A stretch of 64,000 nt of DNA from assembly GCA_904063045.1 (NCBI GenBank), contig CAJFCJ010000007.1, positions 4,285,404-4,349,403 on the forward strand. The letters run 5' to 3'. Shown here in pieces: positions 39,383 through 49,400 of this stretch. How positions within the stretch are numbered: the stretch's first letter is position 1; each line of letters opens with the position of its first letter. This DNA comes from Dimorphilus gyrociliatus. Lineage: Eukaryota; Animalia; Annelida. Under the pieces are notes generated by a model. The model worked only from the letters and a program-made list of their open reading frames with translations. It was not told where the DNA came from and searched no databases. The position numbers and the translations under genes are program-made.

Positions 39383-42300
39383 ATGATAATCAACAATTTA
39401 TTAGTGCAGTTGACTATTATTGCATTCTATGCCATTAAGTGTAAAACTGAAGGTGAAATTCATCTATGGAATAGGTATCATTGTTAATAATATGTCAGCT
39501 ATATGTACAGACATCTTTAGATATACGTTATTATCAATAAGGAAATAAATGTTTTCTAAAAAAAACTGTTTAGGCAATAAGCTTTAATAGATATAACAAT
39601 GTGAGCAATAAGTGAAACTCGTCTAGCAACAACAATGTCTTTGTGCTTACAAATAAGGAAAGTTCTCTGATAGAGTAAAATGATAATCTTCAATTAGTTG
39701 TTTTTTCATTAAATATACATTTATTCTATATAAATGAAACTATTGAAATAATTTATCCAAAACATATTATCACTGTAAAAACCCACTTCTCATATAGTTA
39801 TAAGCAATTTCACAGTTGAATTTGCATAACTTTTTAAAAATAAGTATATATTCTAATATTTCTTATTAATAGCCTGTTAGATATGTATGAAGACTTAAAC
39901 GAAAATGATCTTCAAATTCAACAAAGAACGCGCTTGAAAGACTGCAAATATAAAGTATTTCAGTCGTATCACTACGGATTTCCTAAAGATATGACATTTA
40001 ATGTACTAATCAACAGCATTCGCGATTTAATTAACGATGGTTACTCCGGTTATAAAAGTGGTCACTGGGGTAAAATTGTTATTACTATCAATTTTGCTGA
40101 CTTTTTCAATCAAATTGCAACAAAATGCTTTGAAATTGAGCCAAACAATCCTAATTGCATTTGGGAAATGACTTCCGCCAAAAAAGCATTAGATAATTAC
40201 GAATACAATAATATAAGGGGCAAATCTTCTATGGCCCAAAAACTATCGGGTGTACCTTATTCCGATGAAGAATTATCCGTTATAATAACTTTTCTGGAAT
40301 GCATAGAAAGACGATCGAAATCTTCCTCTTTCATTTATCATCATGAAATAAATTGTCCTAACCCTTGTCTAAAAAAACCTTGCATGAGTATAGATTACGC
40401 AATTCATGATTCGTGTCAGATTGCGTTCCCTGGAGCACAAGAAAATCAATTTATCTGTTTATGCCAACAATATTTTGAGTGGAGTAGTTCTTCATTAAAA
40501 TGCATAGAGGAGGCGGTTTGTGCTGAAGCAGAAGGTATTTGTAAAAACGACGGAATTTGCGTCAGAGACGCAGCGAAGATTAGCACTGGTTTTGTATGCA
40601 AATGCACTGAAACTCATTTTGGTAGAACATGTGAGGCTCCAAGAAATGCTTGCATTGAGAGATATAAAAAAAAACTGAAACCTGGAAATCAGCTATGTGG
40701 AGGATATGACATTGAGGATGGAAAAATGATCGAAGTCTACCCAGGAATGGGGAAAGACGGCAGATTAGGTGAATGCAAACCCATTCTTGGTACTGATAGG
40801 TAAAACCAAAGAAAAAAAGCTGTTAGATTGAATCCCTTATTTTCTTATTGTTTAATCTATTAAAATTAATTGCACGTCTTTGCTATTAAAAGTTTCGGAT
40901 GCTTATGCTATAATGGATTTCGTCACGATGAAAAAGTATCGAAAGATCCTAATTGCCGCCAGAAATATTCAGCTGTGTGCGATAGTAGTGTTTGTCCGCC
41001 TGAAATAGGAAGAAAATGCCGAGAGGGAAAATGTGTTTGTGCCAACATTCTAGAAATAAATACGTTGGAGCTATCCGACGAAATAAGTAGTTCATTTTTT
41101 TTTATCATTTTTCGACAGAAGAAAAGCAATTTGACTATTTTTAACTTTTGTTAGGCTGTAGTGATCTAGAGGCTGCAACAGAGTGGCTTCCATGGGGGCC
41201 TTGTGAACCACATTGTACAACTAGACCAGAACTAAAAAGATATAAAAAACGTCAGAGAAACGGCTGCGCCCTAAAAGATGGAAAATACTGCCATATAATG
41301 CAACAAGCCTTAATATTAACTGAACAGATTGAACGATGCGACAATATTTTCCCTTGTAAGATTGATGGTACTTGGTCAACTTGGAAAGATTGGACCAAAT
41401 GTAGTTTTATATGTGGAAATCAGGCCACCAAGACAAGAGTTAGACTTTGCTATTATAATACAAGCTTTGACTTTAGACAGAATACCAACTTAAACAGGCG
41501 TAAAGTGTTTTTTTTTTATTATTATTATTGAATTTCATTTTCAATACGAGACAGAAATAATTACTTTCTCAACTGTTATCAGATTGGAATAGTTTGATAA
41601 GAGGTAAACCTTGTCAAGGAGATTCGACAGAGACCCAATACTGTACAAACTTAAAGCATTGTCCACCGGGAATTAACCCACAGTTACTAAAAAACTCTCG
41701 TTTAAGACAGTTATTCGATGATCCATTTTTTAATACCTCACTAAATGGTATGACTGTTTGGACAAGATGGAGCAAATGCAGTTTGATCATTAATAAGGAT
41801 TGTGGTATGGGTCAAATGATACGATTTCGCATTTGTCAATATGGACCGGGTTTGTGCCCCGGGATTTCAATGTTTAATATGGGTCAATGCAAAAAACCGT
41901 GTCCAAATAATTATAAACTTGGAACTTGGAGTTCTTGGACAAATTGTAGAAAGGGAAGATGCTTTAGAACTAGATTCTGTAAAGGCTCAGAGGAATTTTG
42001 TGGAAGAAAGAGGAGAGAAACACACGACTGCGTTAAGGACAATGCAAATGCAGCTGAAGCATGCAAAGGCTTATGCAGGTGTTATGGACAGGGTTCGTGA
42101 CAGTGTTTTGTCTTTTCCAACTAATACTATTCTTAACCAATATTATAGTTTTAACTAAAGAAATAGGCTTAATTGCTCTCTTGTATGGTAAGACAATTCT
42201 AGAAAAGAATCGCCATCAATTCATTAAGGGTAGAACTGGAGGCGATATCATGCTCACAAGGAGTAGGTACCTGCAGCGGGTTTTTTTTGTGTATATTTTC

Positions 42301-42713
42301 TTTTGACATACAGGATTTTTGAAGAGATATAAAAAGATGCGAAATCTTTTACGTTAGTATCGAATAGATACTCACAAATGATAGAAATATAATAAATTGC
42401 AGGTATAGAGAAAGGGTTAGCTTGGTACTGGTTTCTATTAATAGGTGGTCTGCCTTTGTTGTGCTGTCCAATTATAACATTTCTTGCATATAATTTTTGT
42501 AATCGTTGTCGGAAAGGCCAAAGATATTCTTCTTTACAAGAAATTGAACACTCGAAGGATAGTCGTAAATATTCAAGGTCATCGAATCAGATTGTTAAGC
42601 CAAAACCACCTAGATATTCTACCATTATATTTAAGGAGGGAGATGCTTCTTCAGACAATTCTTCAACTCTTGTAAAATTATCCGACAATAAAAAAGGTCA
42701 AAGGTTAAAATGA
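39383..42713 (+). CDS. Uncharacterised type-I membrane protein: signal peptide, unknown helical domain, several EGF-like repeats, about four TSP1 repeats, TM helix and short cytoplasmic tail
   Basis: Exon 1 (39383-39452) is MIINNLLVQLTIIAFYAIKCKTE. EGF repeats include CKNDGIC...FVCKCTETHFGRTCE. TSP1 motifs are EWLPWGPCEPHC, WSTWKDWTKCSFICG...RVRLC, WTRWSKCS...RFRIC and WSSWTNC...RTRFC. TM is GLAWYWFLLIGGLPLLCCPIITFLAYNFC. Exon joins at 42090-42400 are uncertain. Confidence 0.8.
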
Positions 42714-42932: not shown

Positions 42933-45900
42933 TTATGAGCAGAACCACAAAATCATTGCTAAGAAGATGTTAACCCATACTGCTTTGATAGCACTACTTC
43001 CAGCAGCTATTCTACATTTTAAAGTATGAAACCTAAAATGGAAGAAAGAGGCAAACTTAACTATGAGTATTTAACTTTGAAGTGGAATCTTACCTATTCT
43101 GTTCGTTACTAAGCATTTTTCTATATTCTTCTTCCATTGTTTGACCATCAAAATACCACGCTCGATCATTAAATGGGTATTCAAAACCCTGACGACATTC
43201 ACACTTGTACCCGCCTCGGTGAAATTTTCTACCGGGTGTCAATAACGGTATCGGGACACACTGAAGGGAAAATGATAATTAACTCTAAGGATAGAGATGG
43301 AAAATGAACACTTATACTAAAGGTCCCGTAAGATTAGATTACGGATTGCTCGAGCTCAAATAGAACGTATGGCACAGGAGAGTATTCACATCTAATAAAT
43401 CCGTGAATATTCCGCCAGTGCCAAGCGTCCGATTAGCTAAAAACTAGGACTACATGATGGAGTCATACTCCAAAGAAAAGGATAATAACAGATACTTACG
43501 TATGTACTCTCATAATGGCAACGGGCAGTATTCTTAAAAGCGTTTGCAATATAGAATTCAGCTGGACATTGATTCAAATCCAGGGTTTCTAATTTAACGT
43601 CTACCGTAACGACTCCTTTAAATTCTAGAGCTGTACCAATCGAATTTTTTCCAAAGAAAGGAACTGAATACGTCACAACCCAATCATTAACGTGACCAAG
43701 ACTGTCTTCCTTCTCTCCACCGCAACTAAAATAGGGCGGGGACCACCAGCCATCATCCTCCTCAGGTGCTCGATAATAAAGGGGGTAAAGTTCAAATTTT
43801 TTAGAAGATGTTCCATTTATATCCGATCGAATCATTGGTTTCTCTGTATATTTGGTTAAGCCGTATGTATTAGATTGCCAACGCTCTTTTACTTCTCTAA
43901 ACCATCGTTCTTCTAAATAAGCTTCATCCAAGCCAGCTTTGTCTAGCGCTCTGTAGTTTTTATTTGCTTGATCAGCATCATCTCCTCTTTTAGTATGGCG
44001 CCAGGCGTACGGACCGAATAACTGACGTGTTTTGCCGTCGGGACCAACATATTTATCTCGGTCAAAGAATATTCCCGATCCATGCAATTTTAAATCTCCC
44101 ATTACATTTGCCAAAGCTTCTCCAAACAATAATTCGATGTTCAGTAGTTTATCACCTCTTAAATTACCATATTCTTCGTACATATCAATATTCTGAAGGA
44201 AATTACTTAAAAAATGTGATAAACGTAGTGCTGTTCTTGCTTGGTTAGAAAATTGCTTTTGAACGCCATAGGCAACATCACCGGGTAATTCTAAGTCATC
44301 CATTGATTTTTCATGACAGTTATCTCTAGTTACTGATTCCTTTTTACGGAGTAAGTCCTGCATACGTTCATGAGCTTTTTTGTCGAAGGTGGCCCTTTTA
44401 GATCGACTTTTAGCATTAGTACTGCGTTTATATCGGGCAACGAAGACCTTTCTCTTTCTCCTCTGAGATGACTCAATCATTTCTTGGGCTTTATTGTAGC
44501 TATATTGCAGTTCCTTTAAGTCAACTGACCGCAAAAATCGCTGCTGTTTTGTCAATATTTTGCTTTGACCGTCTAACGCCTTAATGGAACGTTTTTCAAC
44601 TTTTTCTTTATCTATAACTGGTCCTTTAGCTTCTCGTTTTTCAATTTTTGATTGCTTTTTTTGGACGGAGCGTTTTGAGCGACCAATACCTAGAGTCCCA
44701 TTTCCACGGATGATTGGTATAACTTGTTTCAGGCCTACAGGTAAACATTCAAATCCTCTTTCATACTCTTCCTCAGTTGCGCTTTCAATTTGAGATCCTT
44801 GGAAAGGGCCTCTTTGCCAAGGAGGATATCTGTAACCAGGAAGGCATACGCATTGATAGCCTCCTCGTCGAAAGCCCCAGCCATACAAGGGCTCGCACAT
44901 AGTGGACTTTTTACATCTAGATATATCGGTCAGATATGATTTAGGATTTCCTATTCCAGCAGGACATGGGTTAAAATCAACGCTCAAAAAGTCTATATCT
45001 TGTACAGATGCTGCAGTAATCCTATAAAATAGTACACTCTTATGTAATTTAATTTCTAAACTAGACAAAAAAAACAAATACGAACCAATGTCTTCTTAAA
45101 TGAAACCATTCCAAGTATCTTGGCAAGTGATCAACTATAGGAGCAGAAGCCGAAACAATCCATTTATTTGATCTTCCACAATCGAAATAGGGTCTGGTAA
45201 AATCTACAGGTTGAAATACTTGCTTTTGATTTTGCTGATTTTGTCCTGGAAAAGGTGGACCATAGAAAGTTTTTCCTTCAAACTCGTCAGTAGTAAATTT
45301 TCCAGTTTCGTTCGAATATTTTATACCGACATTATAATTATGTTTCTTGATCGAATCCAAACCTTTCTTACCCCACCCATCGGGCATCCACTTAAAATAC
45401 CATTCATTTAATTTATACGTGTCTCGAGTATAATTGTTTTGTGGACCAGCTCCGTAATCAACTACGTCTATAGTTTGATTTGTGGGCTCTCTTAAAAAAT
45501 TTGTAGGTTCATTATAATCGTCAAATCTAAATGCCCTGGGTCCAAATAGTAACATGGTATGATTTATAGCTATATTTCTATACCAATTAGGATAGGTCTT
45601 ATTAAACTCGAAAAATATTCCTGACCCATTGATGTTATATTCATTGGCACTGACGTCTGCTGCTGCTGAAAAGTAGTAGTACATCAATCCAGGTTGATAT
45701 TTGAAATGATGAGTTTCATTAAGTTTTTGAAAAACATAAGAGTAGAAAAAAGCCCGATTTAAAGCCATATTGTGCAAGTGAAGAAGATTGGTTCTATTCG
45801 GATAAATAACAGTGGACAGAAGTCGATTAAATTGAGGTACTTGACCGACGGTTGTCTCCGGTAAATGAAGTTCTTCTTTAGATTTGGAAGCACAATTTTC

Positions 45901-46080
45901 AGCGTTAACAGCGTCCATTCTTTGTGTAATTTCATCGAATTTATCAAACTTAGCCCATGAATAGGGCGATTTAGATTGGACAACAACTGCTTCTTGCAAT
46001 ACGACGAAAGCAAATATAAGAGCTGCCCCTGCTGTAACTATTCCAAATCGGAAAGTTTCTCCCTTCTTAAATCTCTCCAT
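42933..46080 (-). CDS. Secreted, probably GPI-anchored protein with two tandem GPR158/GPR179-type extracellular (Cache + EGF) modules and no 7TM domain
   Basis: N-terminal hydrophobic signal. Module 1: GSGIFFE, FGPRAFR, TRPYFDCGRSNKWIVS, DFNPC, GFRRGGYQCVCLPGY. Module 2: ARTALRLSHFL, GSGIFFD, FGPYAWR, GWWSPPYFSCGG, WVVTYSVPFFG, FKGVVTVDV, DLNQC, HRGGYKCECRQGFEYP. The last exon is FHTLKCRIAAGSSAIKAVWVNIFLAMILWFCS with a stop at 42933. Confidence 0.85.
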
Positions 46081-46465: not shown

Positions 46466-49400
46466 ATGGAGGGTGAGGATAAGGTAAAAACATAGATTAA
46501 ATCTACTTAAAAATTTTCTGCAAAAGATACCTCATTCTATCGTAAATGGGGACTTTATTAGTAACCATGTGTCAACACTGACTTATACAGAGACCGAACC
46601 TCGGACTCTTTACAACAAAAGATTGATACACACCTAACCCCCTCAATTTTATGCACAAATATTATATTGACAAATATAACTTGTGATGAAAATTCTAATT
46701 AAGCGTCATATCCTCCTACAGTTATCATTATCGTTCCTTGATGTCGACGGTTTGAATGACGACGAAAAGGATGAATTGTCAGGTATTTTACGCGGGAAAG
46801 GTGCTATGGAAATGACTAGTATTGTAAGTAACCTCTATTAAGTGTCACACGAAGGTCGATTAACGAGATTTTTTTAGCCGGTTACATCGTCTGAACAGCA
46901 TAATGAACTTTTTGAAGAAAAAATCGACAATTCTTTAGTAGAAGACGAATATAAAGGACATGGCGAGAGAGCGCACCTGGACCGAGATTGCGATTCCGGA
47001 ATGAATGTGGACGATTCCTTAGTTAGCGGACATGCATTTCCAGATCTTCAAGAACCGTTTCCAGCTCCTTATTTTCCTAATAATATGCCACCATATATTC
47101 CTTGTTATCCAGTCAGTGACGGACAGTCACCAGACTCATGGCACCAGCCTGTGTTTATGCCGTATTATGGCGTCGGAACCTTTCTTCATCACTCGCAACC
47201 TCCATTGTTAGTACCGCAGCATTATCCTCACCCTTACCACTTGCCTTTGCCTGCGGGACTACCACTGGGTTTTGATCCCCACCGACCTCCACCCAATTTC
47301 ATAGACCCGCAGCAACAGGGTCACACTTTTCAGCAACAGCATGTGAAACGTCAGCACCATGCTCAAAGCTGCGACTCTGCCTCGTATAAATCATCCACGG
47401 ATAGCACTGGAACGCCCCCAATGCAGTATTATTACGAAGATAATAACACAGATCCGATGAGCATTAAAGAATTCAGAAAAAAGAGTAACGATAAAAAAAG
47501 CAAAATTGTAACCGTCTTAAACAATGCGGTAAATGCAGACCAACCTGCAACTTTAAATGCAAGTGACGAAAGCACAATCGAGGCAAACGTTTCTGCTGAT
47601 AAAAACTGTTCTAGCCCAGTCAATGCTGCAGAAGAGAACTGTAAAGTTCAAGAGATAAATGAAGTAATAATCCCTGCAAAAGAAAATGGTGAAACTGAAA
47701 ATTTGATTCAAAAATCTGATCCCTGTGATGCATGTAATCATCAAACTATGTCTGAAAAAAACAGTTCCAACGAAACTGAAATGGAATTGAAATTTGGAGA
47801 TTTAGAACCTGAATTGCGTTTGTTGGTTAAAACAAACAATAATAATAATGCGAAAGAGGGTGCTAGCCCAAAATCAACCTTGATCACAAATGTTGATGCA
47901 GCTTCAATTTCCAACTGTGTTAATGAAGAGGCAGAGATTGAAAACAATATTAGCCAAGAATTGACTTCCACCAAGCCATCATCGCCGGATCATCCTGCTG
48001 TTAAAGCAGAAAGCGTAGCGGATGAAGATGCTCGTTTGCGTCCTGTTAAAGACACAGACTTTCCGTGTATTCCAGGAACCAAGCCAGCAGTAAAGGAGTC
48101 AACATCGAAAAGCTGGGCAGGTTTATTTAAAAGGAATCGTGGTCTCCAAAAACCCAACAACATCGACGGAACCGACCGCCCAAAGGAAAACTCATTCGAA
48201 AAGGATGACTTTAGTCCTGAGCAACGAGAACGTCTTGTTCAAGTAGCCGATACCCTATTGGCTTACAAACACTCTTATCAACCGTACCCACTTCGCATGC
48301 GTGGTTTGTGCAACAAAAGCAACTGGTGTTATGTCAATGCAACACTACAGGCGCTCCTCTCATGTTCAGCGTTTGTTCGTTTGCTCAAAAATATACCGTC
48401 CAGTGGTCCAACAGGGTCTGTCTCACCTACACCTATTGCGGACTCTCTTATCGACTTTTTGGGTTACTTTGAGAGCTTTTCGTCACCCGCAGTACTAGTA
48501 GAAAATAAAATAAAACTTAAGAGTAAGTTGACATCTCCTAAATTTGAGCAATATAAACTGGAACTCTTTTACAGATCCAAGAGCAACTCCGCAAGATTTG
48601 AATTTAGGCGTGAAGTTTGAACCCGAGTCCATTTATGAGATGTTAAGAGACTGTGAGAGCCAGCAGATTTTTAAGGTTAGTCATGTTACTAAAGTATTTA
48701 TGGTATATATAACATTCAGGTAAACTTTGTAGGATGGAAGACAAGAAGATGCTGAGGAATTCTTAAGCTTTGTCCTAAATAAATTACATGATGAATTTCT
48801 AGCGGCTATGAAATTAAGAAAGAAACCAGTTGAAAATGGGCTGGCCAAAGAGGTAACTGAAACTGAGGACGCTACCGATAATAATAATTGGGAACAAGTG
48901 ATGCCGAAGAATAAGAGTATAATAACTCGTCATGCAACAGTTGAACAAAGTCCAATAATGGACTTATTCGGAGGTGTTATTCGATCAGCTGTTCGTAAAA
49001 GTGGCGAAAAAGATTCAGCTACTTTACAACCATTTTTTACTCTACAACTTGATATACAACCGGAAAATGTAAACAGTGTACGCGATGCTTTGGAGCATCT
49101 GGCTTCTAAGGAAGTCTTAACTGATGTGACTAGTGGGAAAACAAATCAACAAGTTGAAGCTACACGTCGGACTACGCTTGAACATTTGCCTCCTATTCTT
49201 ATACTTCATCTAAAAGCTTTTGTTTATCAAAAGAACGGGGGAAGCGTAAAAGTTTGCAAAAATGTGGATTTTGATTGCACATTAGAGATCAGTAAAGGTA
49301 TTTGTTTTTTTATAGTTGCTATTCAATTTATTAAACACGTTAAATAATATTGCAGAACTTTTATCATCAACTGTCCGTCAGAAGTACCAATCAGCAAATT

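What the first reader, a model, noticed from the sequence alone, without database searches (positions are those of the whole stretch)
44394..44681. Prohormone-like linker with seven furin/dibasic sites between the two Cache modules
Seen within about 95 aa: RSKR, EKR, EKR, RFLR, RRKR, RYKR and RSKR (GRSKR/SVQKKQSKIEKR/EAKGPVIDKEKVEKR/SIKALDGQSKILTKQQRFLR/SVDLKELQYSYNKAQEMIESSQRRKR/KVFVARYKR/STNAKSRSKR/ATFD). Established: R-X-[K/R]-R is the furin consensus, and KR is the PC1/PC2 site. Inference: the precursor is cut into a soluble N-terminal module, a GPI-anchored C-terminal module and up to about six short peptides, i.e. a receptor-ectodomain and peptide polyprotein. Site density far exceeds what one cut would need.
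Basis: partly seen in the sequence, partly recalled or inferred. Interest (0 to 1): 0.72.

Follow-up and report, generated by a model that had tools for sequence, protein, structure and literature searches.

The report
Conserved convertase-cut linker between Cache modules
A worm cell-surface protein built from two sensor-like halves has a flexible joining piece studded with protease cutting signals that are kept across several animal phyla, so the protein is very probably cut into two chains as it matures, though there is little sign that it also makes hormone-like peptides.

Summary
**Observation:** confirmed, on the minus strand. Window 44394-44681 encodes 96 residues running RSKR to RSKR. 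They hold four R-X-K/R-R motifs, two EKR and one RFLR.

**Gene:** the window is Dimorphilus gyrociliatus (annelid) and the gene is DgyrCDS6740. It reads signal peptide, Cache/EGF-like module 1, linker, Cache/EGF-like module 2, GPI-type tail.

**Not chance:**
- Shuffling the linker gives P = 0.0006 for the four canonical motifs.
- In 63 long-linker orthologues there are 175 motifs against about 23 expected. Motif density is about 250 times higher inside the linker than outside it.
- The motifs look like convertase sites, not general basic patches. R-x-K-R dominates, P1' is S/D/E, and P2' is aliphatic.
- The site next to module 2 is present in every named annelid, mollusc, brachiopod, flatworm and rotifer sequence examined, and in a nematomorph. 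Arthropods have a short linker with no motif, and a tardigrade has a long one with none.

**Supporting context:** AlphaFold2 predicts a disordered linker between two confidently folded modules. The genome has nine convertase loci.

**Reading:** a convertase-excised connecting segment yields a two-chain, GPI-anchored protein. The prohormone part of the claim is weak. Amidation signals are almost absent and the spacers drift between phyla. Cleavage itself is untested.

**Novelty:** a new variant of a known kind, in an uncharacterised family.

The parts
45086..46080 (-). Exon 1: start codon, signal-peptide-like N-terminus (about the first 35 codons, 45976-46080) and most of Cache-like module 1
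   Evidence: ORF plus a GT donor at 45085-45084. The N-terminal hydrophobic helix spans residues 12-34. The exon 1/2 join is the same as in the public protein P0001.
43500..45021 (-). Exon 2: end of module 1 with its EGF-like Cys-rich part, the basic linker, and most of Cache module 2 (GPR158_179_EC)
   Evidence: AG acceptor at 45023-45022 and GTAAGT donor at 43499. Pfam PF22572 scores 99.3 bits against a cut-off of 28.1.
44394..44681 (-). The 96-residue linker core, RSKR to RSKR, predicted disordered
   Evidence: pLDDT is below 50 across most of residues 430-544 of P0001.
44670..44681 (-). Site A, RSKR|S: the first convertase motif, just after module 1
   Evidence: Falls in a conserved R+KR|S column in all 15 annelid-type sequences. 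Also present in molluscs, Lingula, rotifers and flatworms.
44589..44597 (-). EKR|S dibasic site
   Evidence: Aligns with a [KR]R|T column kept in most annelid-type sequences.
44634..44642 (-). EKR|E dibasic site (not conserved)
   Evidence: there is no conserved column at this position.
44529..44540 (-). RFLR: minimal R-X-X-R motif inside a conserved annelid motif (IL-x-KK-x-RFLR)
   Evidence: present in 11 of 15 annelid-type sequences.
44451..44462 (-). RRKR|K canonical motif
   Evidence: Its position is only loosely conserved.
44424..44435 (-). Site C, RYKR|S, inside the conserved motif VPRYKR(D/S)
   Evidence: the consensus vPRYKRd runs through the annelid-type sequences. Related motifs occur in bivalves.
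44394..44405 (-). Site D, RSKR|ATFD: the last convertase motif, immediately before the first helix of module 2
   Evidence: A motif lies within 25 residues of the FD anchor in 5/5 annelids, 1/1 brachiopod, 27/27 molluscs, 4/4 flatworms, 8/8 rotifers and 0/9 arthropods. It is also present in a nematomorph. The module 1 / module 2 homology begins at exactly this residue.
43094..43260 (-). Exon 3: EGF-like Cys-rich end of module 2 (missing from the public model)
   Evidence: AG/GT boundaries. The translation matches the conserved orthologue C-terminus.
42933..43032 (-). Exon 4: conserved LKCRIA-small-residue motif, hydrophobic tail (GPI-type signal, about 42936-43007) and stop codon
   Evidence: the same small-residue-plus-hydrophobic tail is found in every phylum sampled.

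Best explanation
The stretch is the connecting segment of a single-copy annelid gene, DgyrCDS6740. The gene encodes a secreted, GPI-anchored protein made of two homologous Cache-plus-EGF-like modules of the GPR158/GPR179 ectodomain type, with no seven-helix domain.

The segment is disordered and carries a set of furin/proprotein-convertase sites. The most likely course of events is as follows. In the late secretory pathway, subtilisin/kexin-type convertases cut at the site just after module 1 and at the site just before module 2, and in annelids and molluscs at internal sites too. This excises and fragments the linker. The single-chain precursor becomes a two-chain mature protein: module 1 as a free chain, and module 2 on the GPI anchor with a new N-terminus equivalent to module 1's mature N-terminus.

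The two modules probably stay together non-covalently as a pseudo-dimer.

**Shown:** the motifs, their conservation, their convertase-type signature, the predicted disorder, the GPI-type tail, and convertase genes in the genome.

**Inferred:** that cutting happens, that the linker is discarded rather than used as a signal, and that the chains stay associated.
For: **1. Motif excess in this protein.** Four R-X-[KR]-R against 0.51 expected, P = 0.0006.

**2. Family-wide excess.** All 63 long-linker orthologues have at least one motif. There are 175 observed against 22.8 expected, and 52 of 63 are individually significant. Five motifs occur in 49,903 residues outside the linkers, against 175 in 6,863 residues inside.

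**3. Protease-type signature, not charge alone**.
- Basic tetrads: RxKR 133 and RxRR 42, against KxKK 15 and RxKK 2, although R is only 52% of K+R.
- P1' is mostly S/D/E. Hydrophobic, Pro or Cys residues occupy P1' in 5 of 167 sites against 49 expected.
- P2' is A, V, I, L or F in 114 of 167 sites against 46 expected.

**4. Positional conservation with drifting spacers.** The first and last sites are kept across annelids, molluscs, Lingula and rotifers. Flatworms keep one or both, and a nematomorph has the last. Annelid linker identity is 16-39% against 57-67% in the domains.

**5. Accessibility.** The linker region (residues 430-544) has pLDDT mostly below 50, between modules at pLDDT above 90.

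**6. Enzymes present.** The genome has nine P-domain loci, and the one tested is Peptidase_S8 plus P_proprotein.

**7. Secretory-pathway context.** There is an N-terminal signal-like helix and a conserved GPI-type tail.

**8. Module homology starts at the first residue after the last site** (E = 3e-7).

**9. Modules probably pack together.** pTM is 0.81 for the 859-residue chain despite about 150 disordered residues, which implies a defined packing.
Against: - No protein-level or RNA-level data were available.
- Arthropod orthologues (0 of 9 with a motif, linker about 30-45 residues) and a tardigrade orthologue (long linker, no motif) lack the sites. Cutting is therefore not essential to the family's basic function.
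- The orthologue counts are not phylogenetically independent.
- The linkers of annelids and molluscs are basic beyond the motifs (K+R 21-33%), so an additional charge-based role is not excluded.
- Each module has eight cysteines, so there is no obvious spare Cys for an inter-chain disulfide. Continued association rests only on a predicted model, for which no inter-domain error map was available.
Confidence: 0.75

Rival explanations
1. Receptor-plus-prohormone polyprotein. The inter-site fragments are released as bioactive signalling peptides, and the density of sites exists to produce them.
For: - There are up to seven basic sites in 96 residues.
- Some annelid inter-site segments carry conserved motifs: IL-x-KK-x-RFLR, IVPR-x-S-Y and VPRYKRD.
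- The genome has many convertase loci.
Against: - Only 2 of 344 dibasic sites are preceded by Gly, so there are almost no amidation donors.
- The number of canonical sites varies from 1 to 5 between species.
- Rotifers have only the two flanking sites, and flatworms only one or both of them, around long linkers that share no sequence with the annelid ones.
- No fragment is repeated within a linker.
- Arthropods lack the segment.
- Annelid linker identity is 16-39%, and most of it comes from the sites themselves.
Confidence: 0.12
2. Basic glycosaminoglycan-binding linker. The K/R clusters bind heparan sulfate or another polyanion and are not cut.
For: - The linker is 33% K+R in Dimorphilus and 21-30% in other annelids and molluscs.
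- From my own knowledge, not tested here: the vertebrate relatives GPR158 and GPR179 bind heparan-sulfate proteoglycans. The GPR179-pikachurin complex appears among the structural matches.
Against: - Charge alone would let K and R interchange, yet RxKR/RxRR make up 175 of 247 basic tetrads while KxKK and RxKK together make up 17.
- The strong P1' and P2' preferences have no meaning for polyanion binding.
- Rotifer and flatworm linkers are not basic (K+R 10-16%) yet keep R-X-[KR]-R motifs at one or both boundaries.
Confidence: 0.06
3. Drifting low-complexity spacer in an AT-rich genome. The lysine- and arginine-rich sequence, and its motifs, have no function.
For: - The genome is AT-rich: GC is 27-40% across the window.
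- Spacers are poorly conserved.
- Arthropods manage with a short linker that has no motif.
Against: - There is an eight-fold excess of motifs over composition across 63 orthologues.
- Site columns are conserved across phyla.
- There is no DNA-level repeat.
- Motifs are almost absent from the rest of these proteins.
Confidence: 0.04

Closest known systems
GPR158 (mGlyR) and GPR179, class C orphan GPCRs
   Same: Module 2 matches Pfam GPR158_179_EC at 99.3 bits. The family profile hits the Cache ectodomain of the GPR158 and GPR179 cryo-EM structures at E about 1e-19 to 1e-16. The predicted fold matches the GPR179 and GPR158 ectodomains and bacterial dCache sensors. An EGF-like Cys-rich piece follows each Cache domain.
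   Different: There is no seven-helix domain. The ectodomain is duplicated in tandem and the protein ends in a GPI-type signal. A convertase-site linker sits between the copies. I know of no reported convertase processing of GPR158 or GPR179 (my own knowledge; nothing found).
Voltage-gated calcium-channel alpha2-delta subunits
   Same: They are extracellular, membrane-associated proteins that contain Cache domains. They are made as one precursor, cleaved post-translationally into two chains, and that cleavage is a functional maturation step (PMC5092059 and PMC9016415, found). They are described as GPI-anchored in the literature listed there.
   Different: Alpha2-delta has a VWA domain, and none was found here. 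Its chains are disulfide-linked, and its cleavage is attributed to ADAM17 (PMC9016415), not to multi-site furin-type motifs. No excised multi-site linker is described for it. There is no sequence-level family relationship beyond the Cache fold.
Furin-processed two-chain surface proteins and excised connecting peptides (e.g. glypicans, insulin receptor, proinsulin C-peptide, ENaC inhibitory tracts, complement C3/C4 linkers); from my own knowledge
   Same: These have R-X-K/R-R motifs in an exposed segment of a secretory-pathway protein. In several of them, paired cuts remove an intervening peptide and leave two associated chains.
   Different: They are unrelated folds. Here there are up to seven basic sites in a linker of about 96 residues between two duplicated ligand-binding-type modules. 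Processing has not been demonstrated.
Neuropeptide/prohormone precursors
   Same: They have a signal peptide and many dibasic and R-X-K/R-R sites close together.
   Different: Amidation-type Gly donors are almost absent (2 of 344). There are no repeated peptide copies, and the spacers are not conserved between phyla. The sites are embedded between two large folded domains of a membrane-anchored protein.

Membership tests
GPR158/GPR179 receptors (class C GPCR) | Cache-type extracellular domain matching PF22572 | tested here: met
   PF22572 E = 2e-28, 99.3 bits against a cut-off of 28.1, in module 2. The match in module 1 is weak. Structural matches to GPR179 and GPR158. PDB profile hits.
GPR158/GPR179 receptors (class C GPCR) | Seven-transmembrane domain following the ectodomain | tested here: not met
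   The gene ends 32 codons into exon 4 with a single short hydrophobic tail. Orthologues are 800-950 residues and have the same ending. The protein therefore belongs to the ectodomain superfamily, not to the receptors.
Proprotein-convertase (furin-type) substrate | R-X-K/R-R motif(s) with compatible P1'/P2' residues | tested here: met
   Four canonical motifs here. Family-wide, P1' is S/D/E and P2' is aliphatic.
Proprotein-convertase (furin-type) substrate | Substrate travels the secretory pathway and the motif is exposed | tested here: met
   Signal-like N-terminus and GPI-type tail. Linker pLDDT is below 50. These are predictions only.
Proprotein-convertase (furin-type) substrate | Convertases encoded by the same organism | tested here: met
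   Nine PF01483 loci in the genome. The one checked has Peptidase_S8 plus the P-domain.
Proprotein-convertase (furin-type) substrate | Cleavage demonstrated at the protein level | not testable with these tools
Prohormone / neuropeptide precursor | Conserved or repeated bioactive peptide units between sites, often with a C-terminal Gly for amidation | tested here: not met
   G-[KR]R accounts for 2 of 344 dibasic sites. There are no internal repeats (and direct reading). Spacers are unrelated between phyla. Only annelid-level motifs are kept.
GPI-anchored protein | N-terminal signal peptide, plus a C-terminal run of small residues, a short spacer and a terminal hydrophobic stretch with no cytoplasmic tail | tested here: met
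   Exon 4 ends with an A-A-G-S-S-A run followed by a 15-residue hydrophobic end. The same pattern is seen in all 14 orthologues inspected. No dedicated GPI predictor was available.
Calcium-channel alpha2-delta / CACHD1 | VWA domain together with Cache domains | tested here: not met
   No VWA match in the Pfam scan of either large exon.

The most novel reading that the evidence does not exclude
Paired-site excision of the linker is an activation switch. In the uncut precursor the tether holds or masks the two Cache pockets, and convertase cutting releases them. This would resemble the release of inhibitory tracts from ENaC. In annelids and molluscs, one or more conserved linker fragments (the IL-x-KK-x-RFLR and VPRYKRD pieces) could additionally be released as signals, making this a combined receptor-ectodomain and peptide precursor conserved across Spiralia.
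Probability: 0.15. Interest if true: 0.8.

Novelty: new variant of a known kind. Interest (0 to 1): 0.5.

Why it matters
The protein belongs to a widespread protostome family with no published function that I could find. It consists of tandem GPR158-type ligand-binding ectodomains on a GPI anchor.

A conserved, convertase-cut connecting segment predicts a defined maturation step from single chain to two-chain pseudo-dimer. That step is easy to test, and it parallels the proteolytic checkpoint known for the Cache-containing alpha2-delta subunits.

It also offers a natural comparison. Spiralians and a nematomorph keep the sites, while arthropods and a tardigrade do not. This allows the question of what cutting adds.

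For annotation, it shows that the public Dimorphilus model lacks the real C-terminus and its membrane-anchor signal.

Tried and rejected
- **Plus-strand reading of the coordinates.** It is full of stops. The feature is on the minus strand.
- **DNA-level tandem repeat as the origin of the motif run.** None was found.
- **Linker as an alternatively spliced cassette.** Biomphalaria and Paramacrobiotus isoforms differ at the C-terminus, not in the linker. In Dimorphilus the linker lies inside one continuous exon.
- **Basic patch for polyanion binding.** The R-specific positions and the P1'/P2' signature argue against it as the main role.
- **Literature search for the family.** Nothing was found on a tandem, seven-helix-less GPR158-type protein or on its processing. 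One query was rejected for a syntax slip.
- **ESM Atlas feature search.** It returned only the expected GPR158/179-type and Cache clusters.
- **Deuterostome or cnidarian members of the tandem family.** None appeared among the full-length hits that I named from the exhaustive profile search. Only ten clusters were named, so absence there is not proven.
- **Joined four-exon model.** It was not assembled, searched or folded. Exons were handled separately by reference, and the public protein P0001 (exons 1-2 plus 20 spurious residues) was used for alignment and folding.

Full report
**Where and what**

The coordinates are right but the strand is minus. The plus strand of 44394-44681 is full of stops.

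The stretch sits inside a four-exon gene with clean GT-AG boundaries:
- exon 1: 46080-45086
- exon 2: 45021-43500
- exon 3: 43260-43094
- exon 4: 43032-42933

The best database match is DgyrCDS6740 of the annelid Dimorphilus gyrociliatus, at 100% identity. That public model reads through the exon-2 donor, which adds 20 spurious residues and misses exons 3 and 4. Translated separately, my exons 3 and 4 match the C-terminus conserved in every orthologue inspected. That C-terminus is a Cys-rich EGF-like piece, then LKCRIA plus small residues, then a terminal hydrophobic stretch. This is a GPI-type signal with no cytoplasmic tail.

The joined model was not searched or folded. P0001 was used instead.

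**Architecture**

Pfam finds the GPR158/179 extracellular (Cache) domain in the second half at 99.3 bits, and only weakly in the first half. The two halves are nonetheless homologous to each other (BLASTP E = 3e-7).

Each half has eight cysteines.

AlphaFold2 with an 87-sequence alignment gives mean pLDDT 83 and pTM 0.81. Both modules score above 90. Residues 430-544, which contain the linker, score mostly below 50. Foldseek matches the model to the GPR179 and GPR158 ectodomains and to bacterial dCache sensors. The family profile hits the same solved receptors.

The gene is single-copy in this genome, with one distant relative on another contig.

**Is the motif run more than chance?**

Within this protein, shuffling the 96 residues gives a mean of 0.51 R-X-[KR]-R motifs against the four observed (P = 0.0006). 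Dibasic pairs in general are not enriched. There is no DNA repeat.

Across the family:
- All 63 orthologues with a long linker have at least one motif. There are 175 in total against 22.8 expected from composition.
- Outside the linkers, the same proteins hold 5 motifs in 49,903 residues. Inside, they hold 175 in 6,863 residues.
- These sequences are related, so the counts are not independent events. The next two sections address that.

**Sites conserved, spacers not**

- The first site (R+KR|S, just after module 1) and the last site (R-x-K-R, a few residues before the FD motif that opens module 2) keep their positions in annelids, molluscs, Lingula, rotifers and most flatworms.
- A motif lies within 25 residues of the module-2 anchor in 5/5 named annelids, 1/1 brachiopod, 27/27 molluscs, 4/4 flatworms and 8/8 rotifers.
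- Rotifers and most flatworms have exactly these two sites around a long, non-basic linker (K+R 10-16%) that shares nothing else with the annelid linker. Chance motifs would be very rare in such linkers.
- Among flatworms, Macrostomum keeps only the first site and Fasciola only the last.
- A nematomorph (Gordionus) has a single RSKR before module 2, and it is the only such motif in the whole protein.
- Among annelid-type sequences, the basic sites fall in conserved columns. Linker identity to Dimorphilus is 16-39% against 57-67% in the domains.
- Arthropods (0/9) have a linker of about 30-45 residues with no motif. A tardigrade has a long linker with none. An orthonectid has only plain dibasic pairs near the two ends.

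**Protease sites or just charge?**

- In basic tetrads of the form B-x-B-B, RxKR (133) and RxRR (42) dominate. KxKK (15) and RxKK (2) are rare, although arginine is only 52% of K+R.
- The residue after the motif is mostly S, D or E. Hydrophobic, Pro or Cys residues occur 5 times in 167 against 49 expected.
- The next residue is A, V, I, L or F in 114 of 167 cases against 46 expected.

These preferences fit what is established for furin-type convertases (my own knowledge). They have no meaning for polyanion binding.

The genome encodes nine P-domain loci. The one I checked has the subtilase catalytic domain plus the P-domain.

**Most likely mechanism**

Convertases cut at the two boundary sites, and at internal sites in annelids and molluscs. 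This removes the disordered linker and turns the precursor into two chains.

The last cut falls exactly where the homology between the modules begins. Module 2 therefore acquires a free N-terminus equivalent to the one that signal peptidase gives module 1.

The high pTM, reached despite about 150 disordered residues, implies that the modules are confidently packed against each other. I therefore expect the chains to stay together on the GPI anchor as a pseudo-dimer. This is inference: I had no inter-domain error map, and there is no obvious spare cysteine for a disulfide.

The extra sites are best read as redundancy that ensures complete removal of the linker.

**The prohormone idea**

This idea is weak. 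Only 2 of 344 dibasic sites follow a glycine. No fragment is repeated. The number of canonical sites ranges from 1 to 5. Fragments are unrelated between phyla.

Some annelid-level motifs between the sites are conserved: IL-x-KK-x-RFLR and VPRYKRD. A lineage-restricted peptide role therefore cannot be excluded, and I give it about 12%.

**Comparison with known systems**

- **By fold and sequence:** the nearest relatives are GPR158 and GPR179. This protein fails their defining seven-helix feature.
- **By logic:** the nearest analogue is the alpha2-delta subunit of calcium channels. It is a Cache-containing extracellular protein that is cleaved into two chains as a maturation checkpoint (PMC5092059). 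There the cleavage is attributed to ADAM17 (PMC9016415).
- **By mechanism:** furin-cleaved two-chain surface proteins and excised connecting peptides are a well-known kind (my own knowledge).

I found no paper on this tandem family or on its processing.

**Limits**

- Taxon names were obtained for only ten of the exhaustive-search clusters, so the family's absence from deuterostomes and cnidarians is not established.
- Signal-peptide and GPI calls rest on sequence features and conservation, not on dedicated predictors.

**Verdict**

The convertase-site reading is well supported by conservation. The peptide-polyprotein reading is mostly unsupported. This is a new variant of a known kind of processing, in an uncharacterised protein family.

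Noticed in passing
window 42933-43499 (minus strand): The public model DgyrCDS6740 (859 aa) reads through the exon-2 donor at 43499, which adds 20 spurious residues. It omits exons 3 (43260-43094) and 4 (43032-42933), so it lacks the second EGF-like piece and the GPI-type signal that all orthologues have.
   Followed up: yes
window 39883-42713 (plus strand): A run of Cys-rich ORFs with EGF-like and thrombospondin-type-1-like patterns (judged by eye, not scanned) forms a convergent neighbouring gene. Its last ORF ends about 220 bases from this gene's stop codon.
   Followed up: no
window 47001-49347 (plus strand): Two long ORFs upstream of the gene. The first contains a Cys-box-like motif (NWCYVNATLQALL) that resembles ubiquitin-specific proteases. 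This is a resemblance from memory and was not scanned.
   Followed up: no
G000: C6:4302107, C19:961551, C6:5167931, C2:3909508, C19:3086761, C11:816838, C14:1525779, C4:1873495, C6:4651611: There are nine separate proprotein-convertase P-domain loci in a genome of 78 Mb, which seems a large set for a miniature genome. Only L005 was checked (Peptidase_S8 plus P-domain).
   Followed up: partly
L008 = G000:C19:1141973-1145455: The only other match in this genome to Cache module 2 (35% identity over about 190 residues). It may be the seven-helix GPR158-type receptor of this animal. It was not examined.
   Followed up: no
orthologue linkers (P0002-P0017), aligned to window 44394-44681: Annelid-type linkers share short motifs between the basic sites: IL-x-KK-x-RFLR, IVPR-x-S-Y (absent from Dimorphilus) and VPRYKRD. 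Their conservation is not explained by cleavage alone.
   Followed up: partly
P0124/P0278 (Gordionus), P0126 (Paramacrobiotus), arthropod orthologues: Within Ecdysozoa, a nematomorph keeps one R-X-K-R before module 2, while a tardigrade and all arthropods sampled have none. This hints that the site predates the split of Spiralia and Ecdysozoa and was later lost.
   Followed up: partly
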